A DNA stretch of 64,000 nucleotides from Octopus bimaculoides (Eukaryota), in contig NC_068995.1 of assembly GCF_001194135.2 (NCBI RefSeq), forward strand, positions 461,964 to 525,963. The letters are read 5' to 3'. Every line of letters begins with the position of its first letter. The first letter of the stretch is position 1. Position numbers and translations under genes: made by a program. Of the stretch, positions 3,328-63,722 are shown one piece after another. A model generated the notes under the pieces. It saw only the letters and a list, made by a program, of their open reading frames with translations, was not told the DNA's origin and searched no databases.

Positions 3328-3520
3328 GCGCAGACGTGACTGTGTGGTAAGAAGTTTGCTTCCCAAGCACGTGGTTCCGGGTTCGGTCTTGCGCGACACC
3401 TTGGCCAAGTNNNNNNNNNNACTGTGTGGTAAGAAGTTTGCTTCCCAAGCACGTGGTTCCGGGTTCGGTCTTGCGCGACACCTTGGCCAAGTGTCTTCTA
3501 CGATAACCCTGGCCCGACCA
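3328..3520 (+). mobile_element. SINE family B, tRNA-like 5' head, containing a gap-flanking duplication
   Basis: gcgcagacgtgactgtgtggtaagaagtttgcttcccaagcacgtggttccgggttcggtc has A-box and B-box-like motifs. 3339-3410 is repeated identically at 3421-3492 across a 10-N gap. Confidence 0.85.
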
Positions 3521-3637: not shown

Positions 3638-3726
3638 ACACTTGCCCGAGGTGCCATGCAGTGAGACCGAACCCAGAACCATGTAGCTGGTAAGCAAGCT
3701 TCTTACCACGCAGTCACTCCTGCGCC
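3638..3726 (-). mobile_element. SINE family B, 5' head
   Basis: Reverse complement reads ggcgcaggagtgactgcgtggtaagaagcttgcttaccagctacatggttctgggttcggtctcactgcatggcacctcgggcaagtgt, the same head as at 3328 and 63661. Confidence 0.85.
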
Positions 3727-4247
3727 AACGATTGAAAGAAAGTAAAAGGGAAAAAAATGAAATATTTGTCTGTCACCGAATTTTAAACTATTCTCGAGCA
3801 GAAAGCGTTTCGGCTAATTTAACGCTTCACTTCATATTATAATGAAACGTCTTGCAGTGGATCTTAAGTTACCAATATTGTGATCATCATCATCATCATC
3901 ATCATCGTCATTATCATCATGTTTATGATTATTGTTGTTGTTGTCGGTTTTATTATTAATAATAGAGTCTAGTGGGAGGTGGGGACACGACCTAGAAGTG
4001 TGGCAAGTTTATACGGACGGCGTTAGAAGGTAGCTGTCAAGGGCTGACTATCGTTATTGTAGCCTCCACTACTTATATGTGTAGAAACGTGTGTATATAT
4101 ATAATTGTGTGTGTGTGTGTGTATTTGTGGATATACGTAATGTAAACTAAAAACATTGCTAAACACACACAAAGAGAAAAACAAATTGCATGCAATACCA
4201 TCTGTTTGGAAGGTATGTATATACACACACACGCATGCACACACACA

Positions 4248-4391
4248 GCTGTGAGGTAAGAAGTTTGCCTCCCAACCAGATGGTTTCGGGTTTAGAGCTA
4301 ATACACGGGACATTGAGTAAATGTCTTATAGCGTTGGGCGGACCAACGCCTTGTGAGTGGAGTTGGTGGACGGAAACTAAAAGAAGCCTGT

Positions 4392-8679: not shown

Positions 8680-8880
8680 NNNNNNNNNNNNNNNNNNNNN
8701 NNNNNNNNNNNNNNNNNNNNNNNNNNNNNNNNNNNNNNNNNNNNNNNNNNNNNNNNNNNNNNNNNNNNNNNNNNNNNNNNNNNNNNNNNNNNNNNNNNNN
8801 NNNNNNNNNNNNNNNNNNNNNNNNNNNNNNNNNNNNNNNNNNNNNNNNNNNNTATTTAAATATCTGTGTATATGTGTATG

Positions 8881-10815: not shown

Positions 10816-12217
10816 CAGGTGAAATAAAATCATAAAAAGAGTTATTTCATTGAATAAAACAGAATAGAACTTTCATTAACTGTTCAAACAGAGCTAGCTC
10901 CCCCTCTCGGCGGCGGGATTAGCCAAGGGCAGCAAATTTTGACAAATGTATCCCTTTTTCTCTCACTATTCTCTTTTAGTTCTTCTTTCAGCCATTTTCA
11001 TTCTCGTTGCTTTTGAAATTATTTTTATCACTTTTGTTACTGTTGCATTCATAATTGCTGTGATTATTCGGGCAGCAGCAGTGGCCGCAGCAGCAGCTCT
11101 ATTAGCAGTGGTTGTTGTTGTTGTCGATGGATTAATTGTTGTTGAGATTGTTATTGTCATTAACTCGTTTGTTTATCATAGTGTTGTACTGTTTCGTCAT
11201 CATCATCATCATCATCATCATCATCTTCTCTTCCTCCCCCTCCTCATTCTTATCTTCCTCTCTTTCCTTTATCGTCTTTATTGTCGTTGCTGTGGTCCTC
11301 AACATCATCATCATCAACATTCTCTGAAATCTACTACTACTACTACTGCTGCTGCTGCTAAAAGTCGTAGCGATAGCACTAACAACAGCAATAATAATGA
11401 TGATGATGATGATGTTGATGACAGCGATGATGTTGGTTACTTTTATTCGCCTCAGGGGAATCCAATAAAGGGGACACTACAAGGACAGGTTACAATGTGT
11501 GAGGGTGGGTGGGTTACAAGAGAAGAGAATAAAAAAGAAGAGGAGCGGGGGGAGGGGCAAGAAATTAGATAAAAATGCTTATTATTATTATTATTATTAT
11601 TATTATTGTTTGGTCCTTTCTTATCCGTTAATTACTTTCTCTCTTTTTACTAATCATAATTCGCCAATATGCAAATGCTTTTTTTAAAATGTCGCCCAAT
11701 GCAAAACCCCCACCACCACCACCACCACTGCCGTAACCGTTTTTATTTTGGGTAATTAACTTTGTTTTATTTATCCACAAACACACACCCCCATACACAC
11801 ACATATATATGTATACATATGTCTGTGTGTGCGTGTATGATATTTAAATACTTTCCGTTCCTTATTCTTTATTTCGAACGTTTTCCTCTCCCTATTTCTG
11901 CCCACTAAATTTTAACAACAACAACAACAACAATAATAATAATAATAATACTACAATAACAACAATTAAATAAAACAAGTCCCGAATGCTCCGCCCTTGT
12001 CTCCATTCTCTTATTTACCGTAACGACAGATAAAGTTATTTGACTGTTATTTCTGAAAACAAAATAAAAAATTTTAAAAAAAGCTAATAGTTATAACAAA
12101 AAAAAAACAACCTTTTCACGATTTCCATAAGCAATGTTTTCATAGAAAACAGGTGACTGGAATTATTATCGCCATTATTATTGCTACTTCTGCAGTTGAA
12201 TGAAGGGTAGAGGAGGG

Positions 12218-12615
12218 AGTAAGCGAAAACAGGTAGGGGCAGTAACAGAATGGCCAAACCCCGACCACCAACAGTCTTTTTGTTTGACGTTATGGCCCCA
12301 CTGTGTCCTGCTTTATACCCCGCTCCCTTGGATAACATCAATTTTGACTGTAATTCTTTCACGAGGTCAATACTACGATAAATGACATAACTACATGGTT
12401 AAAGAAGTTCACTTCGCAACCTCCTTAACCATGTAGTTATGTCATTTATCGTAGTATTGACCTCGTGAAAGAATTACAGTCAAAATTGATGTTACCCAAG
12501 GGAGCGGGGTAAGGTATAAAGGAGGACACAGTGGGGTCATAACGTCAAACAAAAAAGACTGTTGGTGGTCGGGGTTTGGCCATTCTGTTACTGCCCCTAC
12601 CTGTCTTTGCTTACT
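12218..12615. repeat. Long fold-back inverted repeat (~190 bp arms, roughly 95% identical, ~8-22 nt centre)
   Basis: 12218-12402 is the reverse complement of 12425-12615, with about five substitutions, a 1-nt indel and a 5-nt indel counted by eye. An imperfect stem continues to the loop at 12410-12417. Confidence 0.97.
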
Positions 12616-13905
12616 TAACAGAAAAATACGAAAATTGTTGACAATGCATAGAATGCACCACCCTAAGGCAGATATAGAACGACTCTACCTGCCAAGAAAA
12701 GAAGGTGGCCGTGGACTTTTACAACTGGAATTAACAATGAAGATTGCCACAATTGACTTAGACACCTACCTGAAGAACTCTGAGGACTGGATGTTAAAAC
12801 TTGTCTCAAAGCACGAAAACAAAACAGGCAAAGGAATATCTAAGTGAATTCCAAATACAACAAACCCCAGAATTAGACAAACTAGAAACAAGCACAAAAA
12901 AAGCTAAGCGCATGAAAACCCGTGCTAAAACTGCTGCCTTAGATACTCTTACTGATAAATGGCAAGAAAAACCCCTCAATGGCAAATACCCAAAGAGAGC
13001 TAATAGTGCCAATGTTGACAAAGCCCTTACCCATCAATGGTTAGTGTCTTCTGGCTTAAAATCAGAGACAGAAGGGTTGATGATAGCAGCCCAAGATCAA
13101 TGTCTACCTACAAGGAGCTACCAGGCCAACATATTAAAGAATGGCAGCTGCCCAACATGTCGTGTATGTAAACAAGATGAAACTATTCATCATGTCTCCA
13201 TGTGCAGTCTTCTTGCGCCTACAGAGTATCTCAACAGGCATGCTAGAGCAGCACAATATATCCACTGAGTAATTTTCAAAAACTTGGACCTGCCCCATGA
13301 TAAAAACTGGTGGGAACACAAACCACCCCCAGTACTTCAAAACGATTACATCTTACTCCTCTGGAACTTCACCATTCAAACTGACAGAAAAGATATATGC
13401 AAATAGGCCAGACATCATACTGAAAGACTTCAGACAAAAATCATGCCTCTTCATTGATATGACTGTCCCAATCGATATAAACCTATCTGTCAAGACCTAC
13501 CAAAAACTGAGCAAATATAAAGATCTTGAAATAGAAATTAGCAAAATGTGGAACCTCAAGACTAAAACAATACCTGTTGTCATAGGTGCCCTAGGAATGA
13601 TAGCAAAAGAGGCTGATTCCTACCTAGCTCAGATACCAGGAAACTCCAAAATGTAAAAGATAGTTTTCATGGGAACTGCCCATATCCTACGTAAAATACT
13701 ATCTATGTAATCTCAAATTTAAAAACAAATTCATGATTTTCTTATATTTTCTTAAAAATTCTCTAGAACAATTCTATGTGCAAAACCAAATATATGACAC
13801 CCTAGGCATAACACCAACTTGAGCATCTAACTTGTTGTCTCTTGGGGTCTCTGAGTGAGACTTGGAGCCAACTTGTACAAATACAATGCGAAAGTCAAAC
13901 ATATA
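12616..13905 (+). mobile_element. 5'-truncated R4/Dong-clade non-LTR retrotransposon (RT C-terminus, CCHC zinc knuckle, restriction-like endonuclease), frameshifted
   Basis: RKIRKLLTMHRMHHPKADIERLYLPRKEGGRGL; WLVSSGLKSETEGLMIAAQDQCL; CRVC..ETIHH..C; NRPDII..IDMTVP..KLSKYKDLEIEISKMW..PVVIGALG; ends KIVFMGTAHILRKILSM* (TAA 13708-13710), then a 3' UTR and (TAA)n. Confidence 0.92.
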
Positions 13906-13990
13906 ATAATAATAACAATAATAATTATAATAATAATAATAATAACAACAGTAACAACAGCAACAACAACAACAACAATAATAATAATTA
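13903..13990. repeat. (AAT)n/(AAC)n array, the tail or target site of the R4/Dong element
   Basis: Lies immediately after the LINE 3' UTR. Confidence 0.9.
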
Positions 13991-15552
13991 CTCTTATTTG
14001 CCCCCAAGGCGAAGGAGGAGGGGGACAATAGAAAGGCAAGGGATTTATATAAAATGATGTTATGAGGGCAAAGCAAAAAAAAACAAAAAAAAAACAAAAT
14101 GCAATCTTACAGGTGGTTGCTAAGTAACATTATTGACTCGGCCATTTGCAGATAAGACAGTTAATGTGTCGCTGTTATTGCTGTGAAGTCCCAGGCCTAA
14201 CTTGACTAAGAATAACTCTAATCAAAGCCATTCCAGCCGTGACGATGCCGTGGTAATATAATTATTTATAGATACATGGATGTAAAGATGTGTTCGTGGT
14301 TAAGAAGAACGATTTGCCAGCGTGCTTTTGTATTGCATCTCCGTGCACAGCAGCCGGAGTAAGCGCTTGCTACCACAGTCCGGATTGGTCAATACATTGG
14401 GAGTAAAATTAAATAGGATGAAGTGTGCTGAAGCCTGTCCGTGGAACTTCTTCACCCGGTTTAACTGCAGCCGAAACTGGACTTTATGTCTAGATTTATG
14501 ATTTGAGGAAACCATCGTTTCGTTCCACATTTCAGAGGCCCCGAAACTGGGTAGCAAAGTGTAAGAACACATCTATTAGTTTATTACACTAACACAGCAA
14601 AAGACTATAAAAATCCGTTGTAAGATTTACGAGATCAATACACTAGCAAAACAAATAAAAGCCAGACTCGTAGAGATAACAATTTGACAATGAATCTCTC
14701 CCCCTCTCTCTCTCTCTTCATATACAGGCTGTGCTATTCTCTGTTAAATGTAAATTGCGCTATTTTCAAGTGTTATTGTATGGTGCATCTCTACCAAGGA
14801 AAGAACACGCCATGACAGTATACTCACCACATCTTTTGCCAAATGTGTTACGCCACCGATGTATTGTTTTCTTAACGACTTTACATACAACACGAATCCC
14901 TCAAACCTTTAATCATATATCCAAAAATCACCATGGTTCCCAAACACATAAATAAAATAATACGTATACATGAAATCACAGAAGGTAAAAGTATATAATC
15001 GAATAAAATACAAATAGAACGGCCAATCGAAAATGTTAAATATAAACGGTTAAAAATCAAAAAAACTACCAGAAAACCTAATAGACAAATATAAAATAAA
15101 GCTAAAAATAAAACAAATATTCACCGACTAAAAAAGTTTTATCAGACGATTAAAATATTTTTTTTTAATTTCTTCAAATTTTTTTTTTTAAATATTTGAA
15201 AAAATCTTTTAGGTGATCCTTCGTTTCCAGTTCCAAAGCTGTCACTGAAACCACGTGTGTTTATTTACATCACATCGGCCTTTTCCGTAAAAGGGTTTTA
15301 GGGTTTGGGTTAGGGAATTCCGTCCCTAACGTAAGATCGCCTAGAAGCCTAATTTCTCAAGATTGGTATTTAGGCAGTGTGCTACATATGCCAGGGCCTC
15401 AATAATTACCGGTATAAACCTGAACTTGTAATCTGGATTGAGTAATGCATGTATCTATGTATGTATGTATTATATCTATGTATATCAGACATATAGGTGT
15501 GTGTGTATATGTATTTATACATGTGTGTGTGTGTGTAAATATATACGTATAT

Positions 15553-15779: not shown

Positions 15780-17476
15780 NNNNNNNNNNNNNNNNNNNNN
15801 NNNNNNNNNNNNNNNNNNNNNNNNNNNNNNNNNNNNNNNNNNNNNNNNNNNNNNNNNNNNNNNNNNNNNNNNNNNNNNNNNNNNNNNNNNNNNNNNNNNN
15901 NNNNNNNNNNNNNNNNNNNNNNNNNNNNNNNNNNNNNNNNNNNNNNNNNNNNNNNNNNNNNNNNNNNNNNNNNNNNNNNNNNNNNNNNNNNNNNNNNNNN
16001 NNNNNNNNNNNNNNNNNNNNNNNNNNNNNNNNNNNNNNNNNNNNNNNNNNNNNNNNNNNNNNNNNNNNNNNNNNNNNNNNNNNNNNNNNNNNNNNNNNNN
16101 NNNNNNNNNNNNNNNNNNNNNNNNNNNNNNNNNNNNNNNNNNNNNNNNNNNNNNNNNNNNNNNNNNNNNNNNNNNNNNNNNNNNNNNNNNNNNNNNNNNN
16201 NNNNNNNNNNNNNNNNNNNNNNNNNNNNNNNNNNNNNNNNNNNNNNNNNNNNNNNNNNNNNNNNNNNNNNNNNNNNNNNNNNNNNNNNNNNNNNNNNNNN
16301 NNNNNNNNNNNNNNNNNNNNNNNNNNNNNNNNNNNNNNNNNNNNNNNNNNNNNNNNNNNNNNNNNNNNNNNNNNNNNNNNNNNNNNNNNNNNNNNNNNNN
16401 NNNNNNNNNNNNNNNNNNNNNNNNNNNNNNNNNNNNNNNNNNNNNNNNNNNNNNNNNNNNNNNNNNNNNNNNNNNNNNNNNNNNNNNNNNNNNNNNNNNN
16501 NNNNNNNNNNNNNNNNNNNNNNNNNNNNTCACACCCACACACGCCTCTCACCGTCACCCACCAACAGTGAGCTTTAGATAGTCAAGAGCGTACATCGCAC
16601 GTGCAAGACTGGGGTGACGGGGGGTGGCGGGTCGGGTTCAGAGTGTGTGTGTGTGTACAGGGGTGGGTGGGAGGATGGCTAGTTTTTTTATATATTTTTA
16701 TAGCTTTTACGGGTTTGTTAGAATTATTTTTGGTTTTATTCTTATTTAATTATTTAATTTCGGTGTGTGTGTGTGTGTGTGTGTCTCTGAGATAGTGTAA
16801 CAGAGTTCGTATGTATATGTGAATCCGTATGTGTGTGTGTGTGTGTGTGTGAATGTGTATGTATGTGGGCATGTGTATTTTCTTTATGTATGTGTTTGTG
16901 TCCGTCTGTGTATTTGCACGTTTGGTTGTGTGTGTGTGTGTGTTCTGTGTGTGTGTGTGTGTTCTGTGTTTATACGTGTACGAAGACATAATTTTTACTT
17001 AACTGTGTATATGCATGTGCGCGTGTCTCTGTGTGCGCATATGTAAACTCATTGTACGCATGTGTGTGTGTGTGTGTGTGAGTGTAATATGCGATGCTTG
17101 TGCTTGTTACTGTGTACAATGCCTGATGTTTGCGTTTGTGGACGCATAGTATTTAGGAGGGCGTTGTAGTGTGCGTGTGTATGTATCTGTGTATGTCTGA
17201 GTGCGTGTGTGTGTATGTGTGTGTGTGTCATTTATCCCCTGCCGAAAGGCAATTATGATAGGAAGGGCTACCCGTTGTTTTTCAGCCAGTGGTTTACAAT
17301 GGAGTGGATGAACAGAAGCAAGTGCGGGGTGTGGTGGTGGAAGGTGAAGGAAGGTGAAGGAAGGTGAAGGAGGGGGTTAGGGTTCTTGCGGGTGGTTTTG
17401 CAGCGGGGGGTGGGGGAGAAGAGGGTTGGGAGGTTGGTGGAGACTGAAAAGAGAGGGGCCTGAAGAAGAGAAAGAA

Positions 17477-26894: not shown

Positions 26895-26987
26895 TTAAGG
26901 TGATTTCAGATTTAGAATGACGGCGCCAATGGATCACGGAAGATGGTTAGACCGATATGACGAGTGGAGCACAGGAGATGAAAAGAT

Positions 26988-27018
<31 letters not shown>

Positions 27019-27749
27019 ATGTATGTATGTATGTATGCATGCAAGTATGTGTGGTCATCGCATAAATAATGCGGTTGCTGAGTCTAATTGCACGAATGAA
27101 CCTTTTTGGGACCGAATAGTGACTGGTGACGAGAAATGGGTTCTCTATAAAAATATCAAGGGCCGAAGACGGTGGGTAGAGAAACACCGGGACCCCAGGC
27201 TAAAGAAGGTCCTCACCCATGTAAGGTGTTTGTTAACTGGTTGGTGGGATGTTAAAGGTTTAGTCCACTTTGAACTTTTAAACCCAAACCAAACGAAAAC
27301 AAAGGAGATCTACTGTGAGCAGCTTGAGTGGCTTAAGTTAGTGCTAGAAGAAAAGTGACCGTCTTTGGTTTCAAGACGAAAGGTGTTCTTCCATTAGGAT
27401 AATGCTCGGCCACATACAGCGAGGATGACATTTCAAAGGCTGAAGCAGTTTGAATGGGAAACGATGTCTCATCCACCATATTCGTTGGACATTGCCCCAT
27501 CTGATTATCATTTATTCCGGAGTCTTCAAAATCATTTGGACAGGAAAAATATGAATTCTGTAGACGAGGTCAGAACAGTACTGGAGGAGTATTTTTCGTC
27601 AGGGTCAAGTGAATTTTGGAAGAGGAGCCTTGCAATTCTACCAGATAGATGGAAGAGCATTGTAGAAAATGAAGGGGAGGATATTTTAGATAAAAAAAAA
27701 AAAGACACTTTGTTAAAAAAAACCCACATTATTTATGGGGTGACCTAAT
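26895..27749 (+). mobile_element. mariner (DD34D) transposon, degraded, with 3' TIR
   Basis: DRIVTGDEKW (D 27128), DNARPH (D 27398), HPPYSLDIAPSDYHLF (D 27503; 34-residue spacing). In-frame stops present. Right end attatttatggggtgacctaat. Microsatellite at 26985-27045. Confidence 0.92.
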
Positions 27750-28196: not shown

Positions 28197-29189
28197 GATA
28201 TGTGTGTGTATATACATACATTTGCATGCATACACATACATGTCTGTCTGTCTGTCTGTCAGTCTGTATGTAGGTCTCTTCTATTTTTTTATTATTATAA
28301 ATCTTCCACTGAGGGAGGAGCCGGTTCCCAACAAAGATATAAGGCTCCATCTTTGAGGATTGCTCTGCATTTTACATTTGATGTAATGTTCACATTGCTT
28401 AATTAAATGGAATCGCATGAAACGATCGTACTGCATTAACTTTATATATCCTTGTTGCTTATTTTGACTATATATATATATATATATANNNNNNNNNNNN
28501 NNNNNNNNNNNNNNNNNNNNNNNNNNNNNNNNNNNNNNNNNNNNNNNNNNNNNNNNNNNNNNNNNNNNNNNNNNNNNNNNNNNNNNNNNNNNNNNNNNNN
28601 NNNNNNNNNNNNNNNNNNNNNNNNNNNNNNNNNNNNNNNNNNNNNNNNNNNNNNNNNNNNNNNNNNNNNNNNNNNNNNNNNNNNNNNNNNNNNNNNNNNN
28701 NNNNNNNNNNNNNNNNNNNNNNNNNNNNNNNNNNNNNNNNNNNNNNNNNNNNNNNNNNNNNNNNNNNNNNNNNNNNNNNNNNNNNNNNNNNNNNNNNNNN
28801 NNNNNNNNNNNNNNNNNNNNNNNNNNNNNNNNNNNNNNNNNNNNNNNNNNNNNNNNNNNNNNNNNNNNNNNNNNNNNNNNNNNNNNNNNNNNNNNNNNNN
28901 NNNNNNNNNNNNNNNNNNNNNNNNNNNNNNNNNNNNNNNNNNNNNNNNNNNNNNNNNNNNNNNNNNNNNNNNNNNNNNNNTGTGTGTGTGTGTGTGTGTG
29001 TGTGTGTTTATAATCCTTGTTCTATTTTCGGATTATTAGCAGGGTTGTTTATCAGAATTATTACTGGGTGTTAGAAACATATTTTGTGAAAAGTGTTGAA
29101 GGTTCAATGATGAGTCTGTTTGGGTCTCACTAATCAACCTTTTATTGTTATGTATTTTGCAGCTTGAAGTCATGCTTTTGTGATTAGAA

Positions 29190-30861: not shown

Positions 30862-32129
30862 NNNNNNNNNNNNNNNNNNNNNNNNNNNNNNNNNNNNNNN
30901 NNNNNNNNNNNNNNNNNNNNNNNNNNNNNNNNNNNNNNNNNNNNNNNNNNNNNNNNNNNNNNNNNNNNNNNNNNNNNNNNNNNNNNNNNNNNNNNNNNNN
31001 NNNNNNNNNNNNNNNNNNNNNNNNNNNNNNNNNNNNNNNNNNNNNNNNNNNNNNNNNNNNNNNNNNNNNNNNNNNNNNNNNNNNNNNNNNNNNNNNNNNN
31101 NNNNNNNNNNNNNNNNNNNNNNNNNNNNNNNNNNNNNNNNNNNNNNNNNNNNNNNNNNNNNNNNNNNNNNNNNNNNNNNNNNNNNNNNNNNNNNNNNNNN
31201 NNNNNNNNNNNNNNNNNNNNNNNNNNNNNNNNNNNNNNNNNNNNNNNNNNNNNNNNNNNNNNNNNNNNNNNNNNNNNNNNNNNNNNNNNNNNNNNNNNNN
31301 NNNNNNNNNNNNNNNNNNNNNNNNNNNNNNNNNNNNNNNNNNNNNNNNNNNNNNNNNNNNNNNNNNNNNNNNNNNNNNNNNNNNNNNNNNNNNNNNNNNN
31401 NNNNNNNNNNNNNNNNNGTGGTGGAGGTGGCGGTGGTGGTGGAGGTGGTGGTAGGCAGCAAGAGGAAATTACTAATTACCAACTGGATGGTATGTTTAAG
31501 ACAAAACTGCTGCTCATAAATACCACCTTGAGGTGTAACTACTTCCCCCTCCATCCTTGCCCTCCACTCTTTTCCTTCACCATCGCCCACCATTCTAGCC
31601 CTCCACCCTTGTTCTCCACCATCTTCCTTCATTGTCGCCCTCCATCCTTGCCCTCTACCTCCAATCTAATCAAAGTCGAAATAAACCAAAGAAAGAAAAA
31701 AAAAGAAATTCTTCTCACATTTGTTGTTCTGACAATTGTTGTAGTTTTTGTAGTTGTTCTTGTTGTTGTTGTGCTTTGATCGGAGTAACTCCAATCATGA
31801 CCACCTCGTCTTTTTATTCCGTTAGGATTACATTGTCTGATGCGTCTTTGCCTTTTTTTTAAAGATAATGAGTGACCCGAGAGAAATTTCTTTGCTATGT
31901 CTAGCAGATTAATCGTCCACGTAGTGCCTTTATTATCAAGTTATTGACCAGTTGTTGCTGTTGTTGTTGTTTCCCCAACACCACTGCCCCCACCACCATA
32001 GACTGGCACATGGTCAAAAATTTATGCAGTGACTAGAATTATAGTAGATTAAATCTAAAGCAGTTCCCCAGGGCGGATCATCCCCACCCATCGCCCCTTT
32101 CCTATGCTACTGGTTTCTAGTATTTGTTC

Positions 32130-34204: not shown

Positions 34205-34924
34205 GTAAGTCAAACAAAATGCCCCAGTATATATTTACCCCTGGTACTTACTCTATCGGCCTCTTTCTACCTGACCGTTAAACTACAAAGGTGCAAATAT
34301 AAAGATGCATACATGCACCCACATATATACACATGCGCTCTCTCTCTCATACACACACACACACACACACATAGACGCACACATGTACATAAATATATTT
34401 ATACCTAGCTAGCTTTCGCTGCTCTTATCTCTCTCCTACTCTATATATACATACACACACAAATTTATGTGTATATGTGTCACCAGTATTGTTATAAAGC
34501 AACGTTATCATGAGCCATATTATTTTTTTGTAGAAACAAAAATGCTTATCTGCTTCGGTGGAACTGTGTTGAAAGATCGTGCGGTGTCAGTTGTCAGAAA
34601 AAGACTATTTATACCAACAGAAGCCTTTATTCCTTCCTATATATCTGTTAGTCTGTCTGTGTGTCTATCGTGCTGTTAATTTGTAAATCTATTATACTCA
34701 TACCTACACACCAAAACCTTTTCAGTTTGTTTTCCTTGAGCCTGTTTGGGAACATAATGCTAGTAAGCATAAGCATGGATTATATGTAGCTCAGTCTCCT
34801 AAGCCTGATAAGCTAGGTTCGTATAGAGAGCCTACAAAACTTTAATCGCATAGAGGCGAATCAAACTGTTGTTAAATAAGAACAACAAAAACAACAACAG
34901 TAATAATAACGGTAATAATAATAA

Positions 34925-35411
34925 TTATGGACAATTTCATAGGAATGTCGAAGATGAGACAGACAGAAAAAAGGTGGCTGTGGATGACCGTATGGCATAT
35001 TATCAGTTACTGAACGCCATTATCCCAGGAATATTAGCCAATTCGATCGCACCACCCGAAAGACAATGACAATGCATGGTGCCCTCTACTTTAAGGGGAA
35101 CGTACACAGGCTCTACATGAAGAAGTGTAAAGGTGGACGTGGGCTGATTAGCGTACGGTAGTGCATTAACAGTGAGAGAAAAAAGATAGTAAACAGCAAA
35201 CAAGATCTGCTACAGTATGCTGTTAATGCAGAAGGATTTACCAACAATGGAGTGGAGGGTGCCAACGAATTCCGATCACGAATAGCCAGCGAGAGAGAAG
35301 AAACTCTACTCCGCATGGAATTACATGATCAGTTCCGCCGTGAAACTAACAAATTAAAAGACCGGGAAGTATCATGGAGGTGGCTCAGCAAGGGTGACCA
35401 TAAAAAGGAAT
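34925..35411 (+). mobile_element. R4/Dong-type LINE fragments (two out-of-order pieces)
   Basis: GQFHRNVEDETDRKK/RWLWM (34925-34990), then FDRTTRKTMTMHGALYFKGNVHRLYMKKCKGGRGLISV...ELHDQFRRETNKLKDREVSWRWLSKGDHKKE. Confidence 0.8.
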
Positions 35412-35692
35412 ATACCACCAGCATTGTCTAAACGACCGCAATATTAGTTTCGGAATTCATCCAAGGCTAGGACCACGGGTCATACGTCTCCTACCCAATT
35501 TAGGATCACAACACATAAATATATTGCAACACAATTTCTTTTCTTCAACAGGCTCTGCCCTATTTAACATTGTCCCGAAACAGGTCATAGGAAAAGGACC
35601 CCATCACCTTTAAACGGAGTCTGGATAAATTTCTTCAAAGAATACCAGATAAGCCACCTATATCTGGATAGAACTCACTCAACAAGAACTCC
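35412..35692 (+). mobile_element. CR1-type LINE 3' end
   Basis: HCLND..FGIHPRLGPRVIR..LQHNFF..ALFNIVPKQV..DPITFKRSLDKFLQRIPDKP..NSL matches the typical F(K/R)..LDKFL..PD.P terminus. Confidence 0.75.
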
Positions 35693-36319
35693 NNNNNNNN
35701 NNNNNNNNNNNNNNNNNNNNNNNNNNNNNNNNNNNNNNNNNNNNNNNNNNNNNNNNNNNNNNNNNNNNNNNNNNNNNNNNNNNNNNNNNNNNNNNNNNNN
35801 NNNNNNNNNNNNNNNNNNNNNNNNNNNNNNNNNNNNNNNNNNNNNNNNNNNNNNNNNNNATATATACACACACACCATGCCAACTTTAGGACGAAAACTT
35901 CTAAATGCAGTGAGTGGTATTCAATCTCGGTTCTGCAGTTAATTTCCCTTCTTCCAAGTATGCCGAAGATGTACAAGTGACGTGTAAAGCTCGTATCGTT
36001 ACACATATTCGCTCTGGCATTGAGAACACTTTTAATATTAGTCTGCTTCTTCATCAGTTCTCCTTACTAAAGTTCTTCTTCATTTCTGTATATTATATCG
36101 TATTAGTTTCATTTACTCGAAGGTATTTGCTACTCCTGTTTTAATTCTTCGGTTTCAGCCTCTAAAGCTACCTTAATGCTTTGAGCGTTAATTAATTTGC
36201 CTCTTCTTAGTCTACCTGACACATTTGCCTAATCTCATACATACTTTCATATTACTGCTTAATACTACATGGACAGGCTTAATGCCTTCTCCAGCTGCCT
36301 GTTGTCTCTCATATGTACA

Positions 36320-38892: not shown

Positions 38893-39424
38893 TATGTTAT
38901 GCTTATACAAAATATGTATAAATATACAGTATGTTTTATACAATACAAAAATGATGCAAGATATATACGAGTTATTTTGACAAGTTCTAGGCGTGTAGAT
39001 ATTTGTTGCCAAACTGCCAATCACCTTTGAAGACGGTTATTGCCCGTTATCGCTTAAATATTTTGCAGACAATTATTTGATATTAATGGTGGTGGCGTGG
39101 TGTGTTGGTGCGGCGAACAAATTGTCTTAAGCTTTTAATTACTCATTCTTAACATTCTGAGTTATAGCCTGGGCGTGTCGGCTTTACCCTCGTCGTGTTA
39201 TTATTATTTTCGTTTCTGCTGTTACTTTGTTCTATATGAGTTGATCCAAATCCCTCAAGTTAGAGTAAGTCCAGCATTTCATTACCAATGGTATTAGTGA
39301 CCGACACTGATAAATTCTAGGGAAAGGAGACCAGAATCAAAGAACTAAGAGTCTGTTAAATTTGTTATAATTCAGCTTTGAATGAGTTTTAAGAGAATCT
39401 TTAATTTTCTGGTTGACAATGTTT

Positions 39425-39870
39425 TCCTTTGTTTACAGCAATGCTTGAAAGGAACGTGTATAGTGTGTGATCGTCGCAGTGACCATGACAGAGAGAGTTG
39501 CCATGGCGATACCTGCTCAGAAGCTTTTGCAAGGTTGCAGAAAGTGTGTGGAGAGGAGTATGTGAGCTGCACACAAGTGTACGAGTGGTTCAGACGATTC
39601 CAAGATGAGACACCCACAACCAGTAGAACTGAGAAAAACATCGTAGATGTGCGTGCAACTGTGAGGGGAGATCGTCGAATGACGATCTGTGAGTTATCCA
39701 CAGGATGTGCAGATTAGTTGCAGTTCAGTTCAGTCGATTATCAATGAAGATTTGGGAATGAGATGCATGCCTGCCAAGTTTGTGCCAAAACTGCTTTCAG
39801 CTGACCAAAAGGACACTCGGGTTTGAAATCTTCTTGATGGGTCAAGAACGATGAAAACTTTTTGGAAACT
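39425..39870 (+). mobile_element. mariner 5' half (HTH region), degraded
   Basis: TCSEAFARLQKVCGEEYVSCTQVYEWFRRFQ..RTEKNIVDVRATVRGDRRMTICELS..SVQSIINEDLGM..AKFVPKLLSADQK (WVP-like linker). Confidence 0.85.
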
Positions 39871-40135
39871 TTGCGTAGGCCTTTGAGCAGGTATCGCCAA
39901 GCTTTTGACAGAACTTGATGCAGATTCTCTGCATGGTCGTGGTCAATGCGACAATCACACGCTACACACGTTCCTTCCAAGCACTGTTGTAAACAGCGGA
40001 AGTGAGCTAGTTCGGTAAAACTTAGTGCGCATGCACAGCAGAGTTCAAGGTCAATCTGTGTCAAGCGGCTTCACTCTGCGTGCTAAGCTTCGTTACTATG
40101 GCAACAGTCCGGATACTTATTGAAGAGACCATGTA
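39855..40135 (-). mobile_element. mariner 5' end (TIR, 5' UTR and first codons), inverted relative to the adjacent copy
   Basis: Reverse strand starts ta-catggtctcttcaataagtatccggactg and encodes QRICIKFCQKLGDTCSKAYAK. 39932-40000 is the reverse complement of 39425-39490. Confidence 0.8.
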
Positions 40136-54770: not shown

Positions 54771-55422
54771 ATTTTTATTTTACTTTTATCCAATTTGTAA
54801 ATCAAATTTTATTGGCATAAGGTAGATTTAAAAGGCTGAAAGCTGAATGTTTATTTGTGAAGAAATATCGAAATTAGGTGGTGTTTCTTGTTAACCTAGT
54901 ATATATATATATATATATATATANNNNNNNNNNNNNNNNNNNNNNNNNNNNNNNNNNNNNNNNNNNNNNNNNNNNNNNNNNNNNNNNNNNNNNNNNNNNN
55001 NNNNNNNNNNNNNNNNNNNNNNNNNNNNNNNNNNNNNNNNNNNNNNNNNNNNNNNNNNNNNNNNNNNNNNNNNNNNNNNNNNNNNNNNNNNNNNNNNNNN
55101 NNNNNNNNNNNNNNNNNNNNNNNNNNNNNNNNNNNNNNNNNNNNNNNNNNNNNNNNNNNNNNNNNNNNNNNNNNNNNNNNNNNNNNNNNNNNNNNNNNNN
55201 NNNNNNNNNNNNNNNNNNNNNNNNNNNNNNNNNNNNNNNNNNNNNNNNNNNNNNNNNNNNNNNNNNNNNNNNNNNNNNNNNNNNNNNNNNNNNNNNNNNN
55301 NNNNNNNNNNNNNNNNNNNNNNNNNNNNNNNNNNNNNNNNNNNNNNNNNNNNNNNNNNNNNNNNNNNNNNNNNNNNNNNNNNNNNNNNNNNNNNNNNNNN
55401 NNNNNNNNNNNTAATATATGTT

Positions 55423-56429: not shown

Positions 56430-56815
56430 TACTGTTGTTGTTGTTATTGTTACTTAATTTCTTTCGTATCTGTTTCTATGTCAGCTACACAAGATTTAGA
56501 ATTTAGCTTTGCAAAATCCCCTACTCCACAACCCCCGTGCAATACAGAAATTATTCTTTTTAACTCCGGTTTTGTTGGAACTCCTGGAGTCTTCTATGCA
56601 TAGCGGGCTTGCTACCTGCAGCCTACAGTACCATACTATCCATTCTTTTCAACTAATTCCTTCCTGATTATTCTGGCCATGCCAAGGGGGCAAACCTTTT
56701 GCAACAGTTCTACTTGGCATTCTATTCCCATTTCCTTTATATTCCTCTTGATGCCTTCTGATACTGTCCCCAAGGACCCAACAATAATTATTTCGAAGCA
56801 ATTTAGTACACTTGA
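56430..56815 (-). mobile_element. R4/Dong-type LINE 3' end (endonuclease C-terminus, 3' UTR, AAT/AAC tail)
   Basis: Minus strand reads IIIVGSLGTVSEGIKRNIKEMGIECQVELLQKVCPLGMARIIRK, matching the PVVIGALG...LQK..L.GTA.I.RK terminus at 13570-13710. Confidence 0.8.
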
Positions 56816-63660: not shown

Positions 63661-63722
63661 CGCAGGCTGTGTGGTAAGAAGCTTGCTTCCCAACCACATG
63701 GTTCCAGGTTCACTCCTACTGC
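63661..63722 (+). mobile_element. SINE family B head
   Basis: cgcaggctgtgtggtaagaagcttgcttcccaaccacatggttccaggttca. Confidence 0.8.

What the first reader, a model, noticed from the sequence alone, without database searches (positions are those of the whole stretch)
12218..13905. ~400 bp fold-back hairpin fused to the exact 5' end of a truncated R4/Dong LINE
Seen: 12218-12402 and 12425-12615 are reverse complements of complex, non-microsatellite sequence, with about five substitutions (mostly transitions), a 1-nt and a 5-nt indel, and a near-zero spacer. LINE homology (RKIRKLLTMH) starts about 1-2 nt after the right arm ends, and no TSD brackets the palindrome. The arm differences argue against an assembly chimera. 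Inference: either (a) the RLE retrotransposon created an inverted duplication of its target flank during 5' junction formation (snap-back or template jump in TPRT), or (b) this is an undescribed foldback/MITE family into which the LINE inserted or with which it travels. If transcribed, it forms a ~190 bp dsRNA directly upstream of LINE sequence. That would be an ADAR substrate and possible endo-siRNA/piRNA source; extensive A-to-I editing in coleoids is established.
Basis: partly seen in the sequence, partly recalled or inferred. Interest (0 to 1): 0.75.

Follow-up and report, generated by a model that had tools for sequence, protein, structure and literature searches.

The report
Hairpin duplication at a LINE 5' junction
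A dead, 5'-truncated Dong-type jumping gene in an octopus-like genome has a 400-bp near-perfect DNA hairpin fused to its broken end. It is most likely a scar of the known "snap-back" copying error made during insertion, so it is a tidy natural example, not a new kind of element.

Summary
Window 12218-12409 and 12418-12615 are reverse complements: 192 and 198 nt, an 8-nt loop, 7 substitutions (6 transitions), and a 1-nt and a 5-nt indel. It is the only long, complex inverted repeat in the 64 kb. Homology to restriction-like-endonuclease (RLE) LINEs of the R2/R4/Dong group starts 1-4 nt after the right arm. It runs through a decayed ORF to a (TAA)n-type tail. The arms have no LINE, protein, Rfam or in-window relatives and no target-site duplication.

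Best explanation (about 0.5): the hairpin formed in the same event as the insertion. A DNA 3' end snapped back during 5'-junction formation and made an inverted copy of the upstream flank. This junction class has been described for R2-protein insertions, and related forms for L1. Three things support it: the flush junction, arm divergence (about 1.8% per arm) that matches the LINE's own decay (about 1.3-2.7%), and ordinary neutral-looking arm differences.

Not settled: whether the left arm is native flank or foreign "extra template", and whether the arm is a genome-wide repeat. Novelty is modest.

The parts
11913..11966 (+). Upstream compound microsatellite (AAC)6(AAT)6 followed by ACT. It is either an incidental neighbour, or the left half or duplicate of the Dong target.
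   Evidence: TRF. It matches 13952-13992 at 36 of 41 positions. The exact 18-mer AACAACAACAATAATAAT occurs only at these two loci in the window. One-mismatch versions occur at 5 other loci.
11967..12217 (.). Segment 'A': AT-rich unique sequence (GC 0.32) between the upstream microsatellite and the hairpin. It is presumed native upstream flank.
   Evidence: No LINE homology. No significant similarity to the downstream flank or to the arms. Composition.
12218..12409 (+). Left arm (X), 192 nt, GC 0.43. Under the preferred model it is the original upstream target flank.
12410..12417 (+). Hairpin loop and turn-around point (CACTTCGC).
12418..12615 (+). Right arm (X'), 198 nt, the reverse complement of the left arm (96.4% over aligned positions). 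Under the preferred model it is the newly synthesised inverted copy.
   Evidence: No protein relatives in any frame. No LINE homology.
12616..12619 (+). Junction nucleotides TTAA(C). They are 0-4 nt of filler, or the first LINE codon (AAC = N where homologues have D).
   Evidence: Alignment to 110 homologues. tblastn start at 12614.
12620..13710 (+). Decayed ORF remnant of a 5'-truncated RLE LINE. It covers the post-RT linker, the CCHC knuckle (CPTCRVC...H...C) and the PD-(D/E)XK endonuclease (RPDI...D...K). It has two frameshifts (about 12815-12845 and about 13389-13392), in-frame stops at 13266-13268 and 13654-13656, and a short deletion before KIVFMG.
   Evidence: The homologue P0004 carries PF00078 upstream and aligns to R2 protein structures from the RT through the C-terminus (E 2e-24).
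13711..13902 (+). LINE 3' UTR.
   Evidence: Lies between the ORF stop codon and the tail. It is 77% identical in the related copy L001, as far as position 13802.
13903..13990 (+). (ATA/TAA)n, then (AAC)n(AAT)4: the LINE tail merged with its microsatellite target.
   Evidence: TRF. Dong elements target TAA microsatellites (PMC3812793).

Best explanation
A Dong/R4-type LINE carrying a restriction-like endonuclease inserted by target-primed reverse transcription into a TAA-type microsatellite. That microsatellite now lies at 13903-13990. Reverse transcription stopped, or the RNA ended, just after the RT domain, at the codon before RKIRKLL.

While the 5' junction was being made, a DNA 3' end was extended on nearby target DNA in the wrong orientation, instead of joining directly to the upstream DNA. 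There are two possible routes. In one, the cDNA 3' end jumped onto the bottom strand of the upstream flank about 190 nt from the break and copied back towards the break. In the other, the upstream top-strand 3' end folded back, copied about 198 nt of itself, and then jumped onto the cDNA to make the second strand. Both routes give the observed order: upstream flank A, X, an 8-nt turn, reverse-complement X', then the LINE 5' end.

Since then the element has decayed. The two arms have picked up ordinary neutral changes: transitions, a homopolymer slip and a 5-nt tandem slip.

Shown here: the structure, the flush junction, the LINE identity and its decay, and the compatible ages.

Inferred: that X is native flank, which 3' end snapped back, and that one event made both the junction and the hairpin.

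No function is implied. If a passing transcript covers the locus, it would carry a dsRNA stem of about 190 bp.
For: 1. The inverted repeat is real and far beyond chance. It is the only complex one in the window.
2. The right arm ends at 12615 and LINE homology begins at 12614-12620. The duplication boundary and the LINE truncation point therefore coincide within 0-4 nt. A single event predicts this. An independent origin does not.
3. The arms are not LINE sequence, so this is not twin priming or cDNA-on-cDNA snap-back. Six-frame translation finds no relatives among 5.8 billion proteins, and there is no LINE homology upstream of 12605.
4. The ages agree.
   - The arms differ at 7 of 192 sites, about 1.8% per arm.
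   - The LINE differs from columns conserved in at least 95% of homologues at 4 of 72 positions, one of which the octopus copy P0111 shares and so predates insertion, leaving 3 of 72. It also has 5 clearly private changes in 197 aligned residues against P0111.
   - At roughly 2.25 non-synonymous sites per codon, that gives about 1.3-2.7% nucleotide divergence.
5. The arm differences are transitions plus slippage indels. That fits post-formation mutation, not an assembly or library fold-back artefact, which would give identical arms.
6. There is precedent in the same superfamily. [quoted passage not shown] L1 produces inverted duplications and foldbacks at target sites (PMC11702581).
7. The 3' side looks like a normal Dong insertion: a (TAA)n tail in a microsatellite (PMC3812793). 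Dong-R4 LINEs are abundant and recently active in Octopus (PMC13282606).
Against: - No empty site, outgroup locus or genome-wide search was possible. It is therefore not shown that the left arm is native flank or single-copy.
- A Dong insertion should have TAA-type microsatellite on its 5' side too. Here the nearest one (11913-11966) lies 650 bp upstream of the LINE 5' end and closely resembles the 3' microsatellite (36 of 41 positions). If that pair is a long target duplication, then segment A and both arms are all inserted 'extra' DNA, and the simple target-flank model is wrong.
- A second Dong-like fragment in the window does have its 5' end right next to such a microsatellite.
- There is no microhomology at the LINE/arm junction.
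- The age match is rough, because the counts are small. Gene conversion between arms could also make the palindrome look younger than it is.
- Read-level confirmation is missing.
Confidence: 0.5

Rival explanations
1. The hairpin formed in the same insertion event, but its material is foreign. After the LINE RNA ended, the reverse transcriptase switched to another template. This could be a hairpin-forming RNA or DNA, a foldback-element transcript, or a distant locus 'A-X' copied with a U-turn. On this reading, segment A (11953-12217) plus both arms are 'extra template' DNA carried into an (AAC)n(AAT)n microsatellite. The microsatellite was duplicated as a target-site duplication of about 40 bp.
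For: - The compound microsatellites at 11913-11952 and 13952-13992 match at 36 of 41 positions, including the terminal (T)ACT. They are the only exact hits for AACAACAACAATAATAAT in the window.
- Dong elements target TAA microsatellites, so microsatellite is expected at the 5' junction (PMC3812793). The second Dong-like fragment at about 34935 does abut such a repeat.
- 'Extra template' 5' junctions are a described class for R2 proteins.
- The arms are more GC-rich (0.43) than segment A (0.32).
Against: - It needs more steps: a donor elsewhere, two template switches and a U-turn.
- Similar compound microsatellites are locally common. Three lie within 11.3-14 kb and about 7 in the window, so the 'duplication' may be chance.
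- A 40-bp target duplication is not documented here for this clade.
- The arm matches no Rfam family above threshold and no protein.
Confidence: 0.17
2. The hairpin and the LINE have independent origins. The palindrome is either a pre-existing palindromic MITE or foldback repeat, or a later replicative inverted duplication of ordinary DNA. Its adjacency to the LINE 5' end is coincidental.
For: - Short inverted duplications (median 284 bp, with microhomology) are a common class of structural variant in humans that is independent of mobile-element insertions (PMC12350158).
- Octopus genomes hold many TIR and MITE families (PMC13282606).
- A copy-number test on the genome could not be run.
Against: - The outer boundary of the inverted repeat would have to fall within 0-4 nt of the LINE truncation point by chance.
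- There is no target-site duplication: no TA or TTAA on both sides.
- The arms contain no subrepeats.
- No other copy exists in 64 kb of a repeat-rich genome.
- No LINE sequence lies to the left of the hairpin, so the hairpin did not insert into a longer LINE.
- The related Dong copy L001-L003 has a different truncation point and no hairpin.
Confidence: 0.18
3. The palindrome is an assembly or library artefact. It would have been created by fold-back chimeric molecules, or by a mis-join of two alleles or paralogues in a draft short-read scaffold.
For: The window is a gapped draft scaffold with 17 N runs. No reads could be examined. No independent assembly of this locus was found through exact-protein look-ups.
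Against: - The arms differ by 7 substitutions and 2 slippage-type indels, and the loop is asymmetric. Fold-back chimeras give identical arms.
- K-mers spanning the loop must exist in real reads for the turn to be assembled.
- The hairpin sits in the middle of a 5.8-kb ungapped contig.
Confidence: 0.07

Closest known systems
'Snap-back' 5' junctions of R2-protein-mediated (PRINT) insertions (Zhang et al. 2024, PMC11371274; PMC11331408)
   Same: It involves the same LINE superfamily (RLE, target-primed reverse transcription). Reverse-complemented DNA is fused directly to the 5' end of a, typically 5'-truncated, retrotransposed sequence. The sub-class that copies nearby target DNA gives exactly the order target, inverted target, insert.
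   Different: Those events are somatic, in cultured human cells, at rDNA, and were detected in short reads. This one is a germline-fixed, aged example of a Dong-type element at a microsatellite. It has a long arm (about 190 nt) and an 8-nt turn. The native origin of the arm is not proven here.
L1-associated target-site inverted duplications and foldback junctions (PMC11702581; PCAWG, PMC7058536)
   Same: A retrotransposition intermediate (a DNA end plus cDNA) self-anneals or is replicated. This leaves inverted genomic DNA next to reverse-transcribed sequence.
   Different: L1 uses an APE endonuclease. The reported foldbacks are usually kilobase-to-megabase chromosomal rearrangements in cancer or over-expression models, not a compact 400-bp hairpin.
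L1 twin priming (5' inversion)
   Same: An inverted segment lies at the 5' end of a LINE insertion and is produced during insertion.
   Different: In twin priming the inverted segment is LINE sequence. Here the arms have no LINE homology, and the inverted repeat is between two non-LINE copies.
Palindromic MITEs and Foldback (FB) elements
   Same: A short non-coding unit made almost entirely of two long inverted arms, which can form a hairpin RNA.
   Different: There is no target-site duplication, no subrepeat structure and no other copy in the window. One end is a LINE truncation point, not host DNA.
Replicative short inverted duplications (human long-read SV catalogues, PMC12350158)
   Same: The size class (about 200-300 bp) and the head-to-head arrangement with a tiny spacer.
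   Different: Those duplications are not tied to a mobile-element junction. Here the boundary coincides with the LINE 5' end.

Membership tests
RLE-bearing LINE (R2 superfamily), R4/Dong group | Homology to the family ORF over the retained part: post-RT linker (..RKxRKLLT..HP.ADxDRLYxPRxxGGRGL..), a CCHC zinc knuckle, and a C-terminal PD-(D/E)XK restriction-like endonuclease | tested here: met
   508 homologues, the best at E 1e-128. The alignment shows CPTCRVC..H..C and RPDI..D..K. The homologue P0004 aligns to R2 protein structures 9nl3 and 9dou from the RT to the C-terminus, E 2e-24.
RLE-bearing LINE (R2 superfamily), R4/Dong group | Reverse transcriptase domain upstream of the endonuclease | tested here: inconclusive
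   It is absent from this copy, because the copy is truncated just after the RT. It is present in longer homologues (PF00078 in P0004). This is therefore a fragment of such an element.
RLE-bearing LINE (R2 superfamily), R4/Dong group | Dong-type target and tail: (TAA)n microsatellite at the 3' end | tested here: met
   An (ATA)n-type array at 13903-13988 follows the 3' UTR directly. Dong elements target TAA microsatellites (PMC3812793).
RLE-bearing LINE (R2 superfamily), R4/Dong group | Phylogenetic placement inside the R4/Dong clade and not in R2, NeSL, CRE, HERO or Utopia | not tested
   No labelled reference sequences were available. The closest named hit is an uncharacterised Octopus bimaculoides protein, 85% identical over 165 aa.
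Snap-back 5' junction of a TPRT insertion | Reverse-complemented DNA fused directly to the 5' end of the retrotransposed sequence | tested here: met
   The right arm ends at 12615 and LINE homology starts at 12614-12620.
Snap-back 5' junction of a TPRT insertion | The forward copy of that DNA is the insert's own cDNA or adjacent target DNA | tested here: met
   The forward copy (12218-12409) lies 8 nt from the inverted copy on the upstream side. It is not LINE sequence.
Snap-back 5' junction of a TPRT insertion | The forward copy pre-existed at the empty target site, as a single copy | not testable with these tools
MITE / Foldback transposon | Target-site duplication flanking the terminal inverted repeats | tested here: not met
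   The flanks are ..GGAGGG | and | TTAACAG... No direct repeat is present.
MITE / Foldback transposon | Multiple dispersed copies | tested here: inconclusive
   There is no other copy in the 64-kb window. A 32-mer from the arm gave no hit in JGI metagenome contigs, and the arm's six-frame translation has no relatives. The genome itself could not be searched.
MITE / Foldback transposon | FB-type arms built of tandem subrepeats | tested here: not met
   TRF finds no tandem repeat within 12218-12615.
L1-type twin-priming inversion | The inverted segment is LINE sequence | tested here: not met
   The arms have no similarity to the LINE part or to LINE proteins.
Known hairpin RNA gene (miRNA or other Rfam family) | Match to a curated covariance model at its gathering score | tested here: not met
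   The best hit is MIR476 at 45.6 bits, against a gathering score of 80. All hits are generic hairpin matches.
hpRNA / endo-siRNA or ADAR-edited dsRNA locus | Transcription across both arms, with small RNAs or clustered A-to-G mismatches | not testable with these tools
Only the folding potential is shown.

The most novel reading that the evidence does not exclude
The palindrome is not a one-off scar. On this reading, RLE LINEs of the Dong group in octopus regularly create or carry long hairpins at their 5' ends, either by snap-back or by co-mobilising a foldback module. That would seed the genome with dsRNA-forming loci of about 200 bp, which would feed ADAR editing or endo-siRNA/piRNA pathways in coleoids.
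Probability: 0.07. Interest if true: 0.65.

Novelty: new member of a known kind. Interest (0 to 1): 0.3.

Why it matters
If the preferred reading holds, this is a natural, germline-fixed and datable example of a junction class so far documented mainly in engineered R2 insertions and in L1-driven somatic rearrangements. It would show that snap-back synthesis also happens in the wild, in a microsatellite-targeting Dong element, and that such palindromes can persist for a long time. That is useful to people who model second-strand synthesis and 5'-junction formation of RLE LINEs, and to those engineering R2-type insertion tools. It also flags a route by which LINEs can create long inverted repeats, which are potential dsRNA sources and fragile sites. 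As a single locus without expression data, its wider biological importance is small.

Tried and rejected
- **Read evidence.** Long-read, RNA-seq and small-RNA checks were therefore impossible.
- **Copy number.**
  - blastn of the arm, the LINE and both flanks against the window found no second copy.
  - Six-frame translation of the hairpin against the 5.8-billion-protein collection found nothing at E <= 0.01.
  - An exact 32-mer from the arm had 0 hits in JGI metagenome contigs.
- **Independent assemblies of the locus.** Six exact-ORF look-ups from the window found nothing. The look-up of O. bimaculoides P0111 also found nothing.
- **The only related DNA recovered.** Three Logan contigs (L001-L003) hold a Dong copy that is 77% identical. 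It is truncated elsewhere and has no hairpin.
- **Arms as LINE sequence (twin priming, cDNA snap-back, 5' UTR).** Rejected for coding regions. A family-specific 5' UTR origin cannot be excluded.
- **Arms as a known RNA.** Rfam gave only sub-threshold generic miRNA-hairpin matches. There are no tRNAs.
- **Similarity of segment A to the downstream flank.** Not significant: score 20, against a shuffle maximum of 21.5.
- **GAAGGAGG-type purine runs on both sides as a target duplication.** Rejected: only 8 nt match, and they are not adjacent to the insert.
- **Mini-palindrome GAAGT-TC-ACTTC at the tip as the fold-back primer.** The extension it predicts does not match the observed right arm, so it is probably incidental.
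- **Purine-only pattern of the six transitions between arms.** The sample is too small to interpret.
Full report
**1. What is there**

Reading the region and running the repeat finder confirm a large inverted repeat. A global alignment of 12218-12409 with the reverse complement of 12418-12615 shows:
- arms of 192 and 198 nt, separated by 8 nt (12410-12417);
- 185 of 192 aligned positions identical;
- seven substitutions, of which six are transitions and one is a G/C transversion;
- a 1-nt difference in a T run and a 5-nt TACCT difference that looks like a tandem slip.

Complementarity ends abruptly at both outer ends. Folded as RNA, the segment forms one continuous hairpin of -340.8 kcal/mol. 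Shuffled sequences give -111 +/- 6 (z = -39). The arms are complex sequence with no tandem repeats. A window-wide scan finds no other long inverted repeat that is not microsatellite or N-run noise.

**2. The LINE**

Downstream of the right arm lies a decayed open reading frame.
- Its conceptual translation finds 508 homologues, the best at E 1e-128 and about 55% identity over the whole 366 residues. They come from many animal phyla.
- The closest named relative is an Octopus bimaculoides protein, 85% identical over the C-terminal 165 residues. The window is therefore most likely octopod.
- Longer homologues carry an RVT_1 domain just upstream of the part retained here. They align to solved R2 retrotransposon proteins from the RT through the C-terminus (E 2e-24).
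- The retained part has the CCHC knuckle and the RPD...D...K restriction-like endonuclease motifs.
- The ORF is broken by two frameshifts, at least two in-frame stops and a short deletion.
- It ends at 13710, followed by a 3' UTR of about 190 nt and an (ATA)n array that grades into (AAC)n(AAT)n (13903-13990).

Dong elements, including one from a snail, target TAA microsatellites (PMC3812793). Dong-R4 LINEs are abundant and recently active in Octopus vulgaris (PMC13282606). Filing the fragment as a 5'-truncated Dong/R4-type RLE LINE is reasonable, although I did not place it on a tree.

**3. The junction**

tblastn with five long homologues starts at 12614 in four cases and at 12605 in one. In the 110-sequence alignment, the codon before RKIRKLL (AAC, 12617-12619) sits on a D conserved in at least 95% of homologues. 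The LINE therefore begins between 12616 and 12620, and the right arm ends at 12615. The outer boundary of the repeat and the LINE truncation point coincide within 0-4 nt. There is no LINE homology anywhere upstream. The hairpin did not insert into a longer LINE.

**4. What the arms are not**

- They have no similarity to the LINE part or to anything else in the 64 kb.
- Their six reading frames have no relatives in the large protein collection.
- They match no Rfam family above threshold. The hits are generic miRNA-hairpin matches well below gathering scores.
- They contain no tRNA.
- They have no flanking target-site duplication and no subrepeats.
- An exact 32-mer from the arm was absent from JGI metagenome contigs.

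Twin priming and cDNA-on-cDNA snap-back are therefore excluded, because in both the inverted piece would be LINE sequence. Nothing supports a MITE or foldback family. The tests for copy number are weak, however, because no cephalopod genome could be searched.

**5. Relative ages**

If the junction and the duplication arose together, arm-to-arm divergence should be about twice the LINE's divergence since insertion.
- The arms differ at 7 of 192 sites (3.6%), or about 1.8% per arm.
- For the LINE, I counted departures from columns conserved in at least 95% of 110 homologues. There are 4 of 72, and one of them is shared with the octopus copy P0111, so it predates insertion.
- I also polarised the differences from P0111 using the outgroup consensus. 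This gives 5 clearly private changes in 197 aligned residues, with 23 ambiguous.
- At roughly 2.25 non-synonymous sites per codon, these give about 1.3-2.7% nucleotide divergence.

The two estimates agree. The counts are small, and gene conversion between arms could bias the arm estimate downward. This is compatibility, not proof.

**6. Mechanism and precedent**

R2 proteins belong to the same RLE superfamily. When used to insert transgenes in human cells, they produce a 5'-junction class named 'snap-back'. [quoted passage not shown] The result is reverse-complemented sequence next to the, often 5'-truncated, insert (PMC11371274; PMC11331408). L1 over-expression and cancer genomes show inverted duplications at target sites, and foldback junctions containing reverse-transcribed sequence (PMC11702581).

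The octopus locus has the order expected for the 'nearby target' sub-class: flank A, X, turn, reverse-complement X', LINE. Two routes give this order.
- The cDNA end jumps onto the upstream bottom strand about 190 nt from the break and copies back to the break.
- The upstream top-strand 3' end folds back, copies about 198 nt of itself, and then jumps to the cDNA end to start second-strand synthesis.

I cannot tell the two apart. No microhomology is visible at the arm/LINE junction.

**7. The main complication**

A TAA-targeting element should have microsatellite on both sides. The nearest upstream one, (AAC)6(AAT)6-ACT at 11913-11952, lies 650 bp from the LINE 5' end. It matches the 3' array (13952-13992) at 36 of 41 positions. 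The exact 18-mer spanning the AAC/AAT transition occurs only at these two places in the window.

If this pair is a long target duplication, then segment A (11953-12217) and both arms are all 'extra' DNA brought in at the 5' junction. That would be an 'extra template' event with a U-turn, not a copy of the native flank. A second Dong-like fragment at about 34935-35420 does sit right next to such a microsatellite, which shows what a plain junction looks like here.

Against this reading, similar compound arrays are locally common: three within 11.3-14 kb and about seven in the window. The variant also needs more steps. I give it about 0.17.

**8. Other rivals**

- **Independent inverted duplication.** Such duplications are common in human long-read catalogues, with a median of 284 bp (PMC12350158). 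This and a pre-existing palindromic repeat both need the boundary coincidence. Together they get about 0.18.
- **Artefact.** This is unlikely, because the arms differ in ways that fold-back chimeras do not, and because the loop must exist in reads. However, the scaffold is a gapped draft (17 N runs) and I could not look at reads. It gets about 0.07.

**9. What could not be done**

There is therefore no long-read confirmation, no RNA-seq and no small-RNA test. Exact-protein look-ups for six window ORFs and for the O. bimaculoides protein returned nothing. The only related DNA obtained was three 1.1-kb Logan contigs. They carry a copy that is 77% identical, truncated at a different position (equivalent to 12957), and without any hairpin. 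That is one small data point against the idea that the LINE travels with the hairpin.

The dsRNA/ADAR/siRNA suggestion rests only on the fold. In the RNA hairpin, the seven arm differences would appear as four A·C mismatches, two G·U wobbles and one G·G mismatch. No transcription is shown, and no gene is evident around the locus.

**10. Verdict**

The most likely explanation (about 0.5) is a snap-back 5' junction formed during insertion of a Dong-type LINE. It would be a natural and aged member of a junction class already described experimentally. It is a neat specimen and a good seed for a genome-wide survey of Dong 5' junctions. It is not a new kind of element, and nothing yet indicates a function.

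Noticed in passing
window 34880-35420: There is a second, more diverged Dong-like LINE fragment on the + strand. tblastn to homologue residues of about 257-302 hits 35030-35158, with E down to 5e-7. An (AAC)/(AAT) microsatellite (34880-34930) lies directly before it. This is an ordinary microsatellite 5' junction, and it has no inverted repeat beside it.
   Followed up: partly
window 36030-36134 (-) and 56654-56788 (-): There are weak LINE-protein matches on the minus strand: an RT region (E about 0.02) and a C-terminal region (E about 0.01). The first lies across an N gap from the 35-kb fragment. It could be a separate insertion or an inverted piece.
   Followed up: no
window 26957-27748 and 39382-40064: There are mariner/Mos1-type transposase remnants: PF01359 at 26957-27358 and the HTH_48 domain at 39382-39717. 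The HTH region has a 66-nt, 85%-identical inverted partner at 39936-40001.
   Followed up: partly
window 3340-3384, 3422-3466, 3657-3713 (-), 4234-4292, 63667-63711: A short interspersed repeat of about 45-60 nt, 82-91% identical, recurs five times. It translates as ..VRSLLPNHMVPGS... It is probably a SINE core.
   Followed up: no
whole window (17 N runs, e.g. 8680-8852, 15780-16528, 28489-28980, 30862-31417, 54924-55411): The window is a draft scaffold with many gaps, mostly next to TA/TG/TC microsatellites. Large parts are dinucleotide and trinucleotide repeats. No convincing host exon was seen among ORFs of at least 90 aa.
   Followed up: partly
window 11913-11952 and 13952-13992: Two near-identical compound microsatellites, (AAC)n(AAT)n followed by (T)ACT, match at 36 of 41 positions. 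They bracket the whole unit of segment A, hairpin and LINE. They may be a long target duplication or may be a coincidence in a microsatellite-dense stretch.
   Followed up: partly
window 12404-12415: There is a 5-nt mini-palindrome, GAAGT-TC-ACTTC, at the hairpin tip. Also, all six transitions between the arms are purine-for-purine on the + strand of the left arm. Both are probably incidental.
   Followed up: partly
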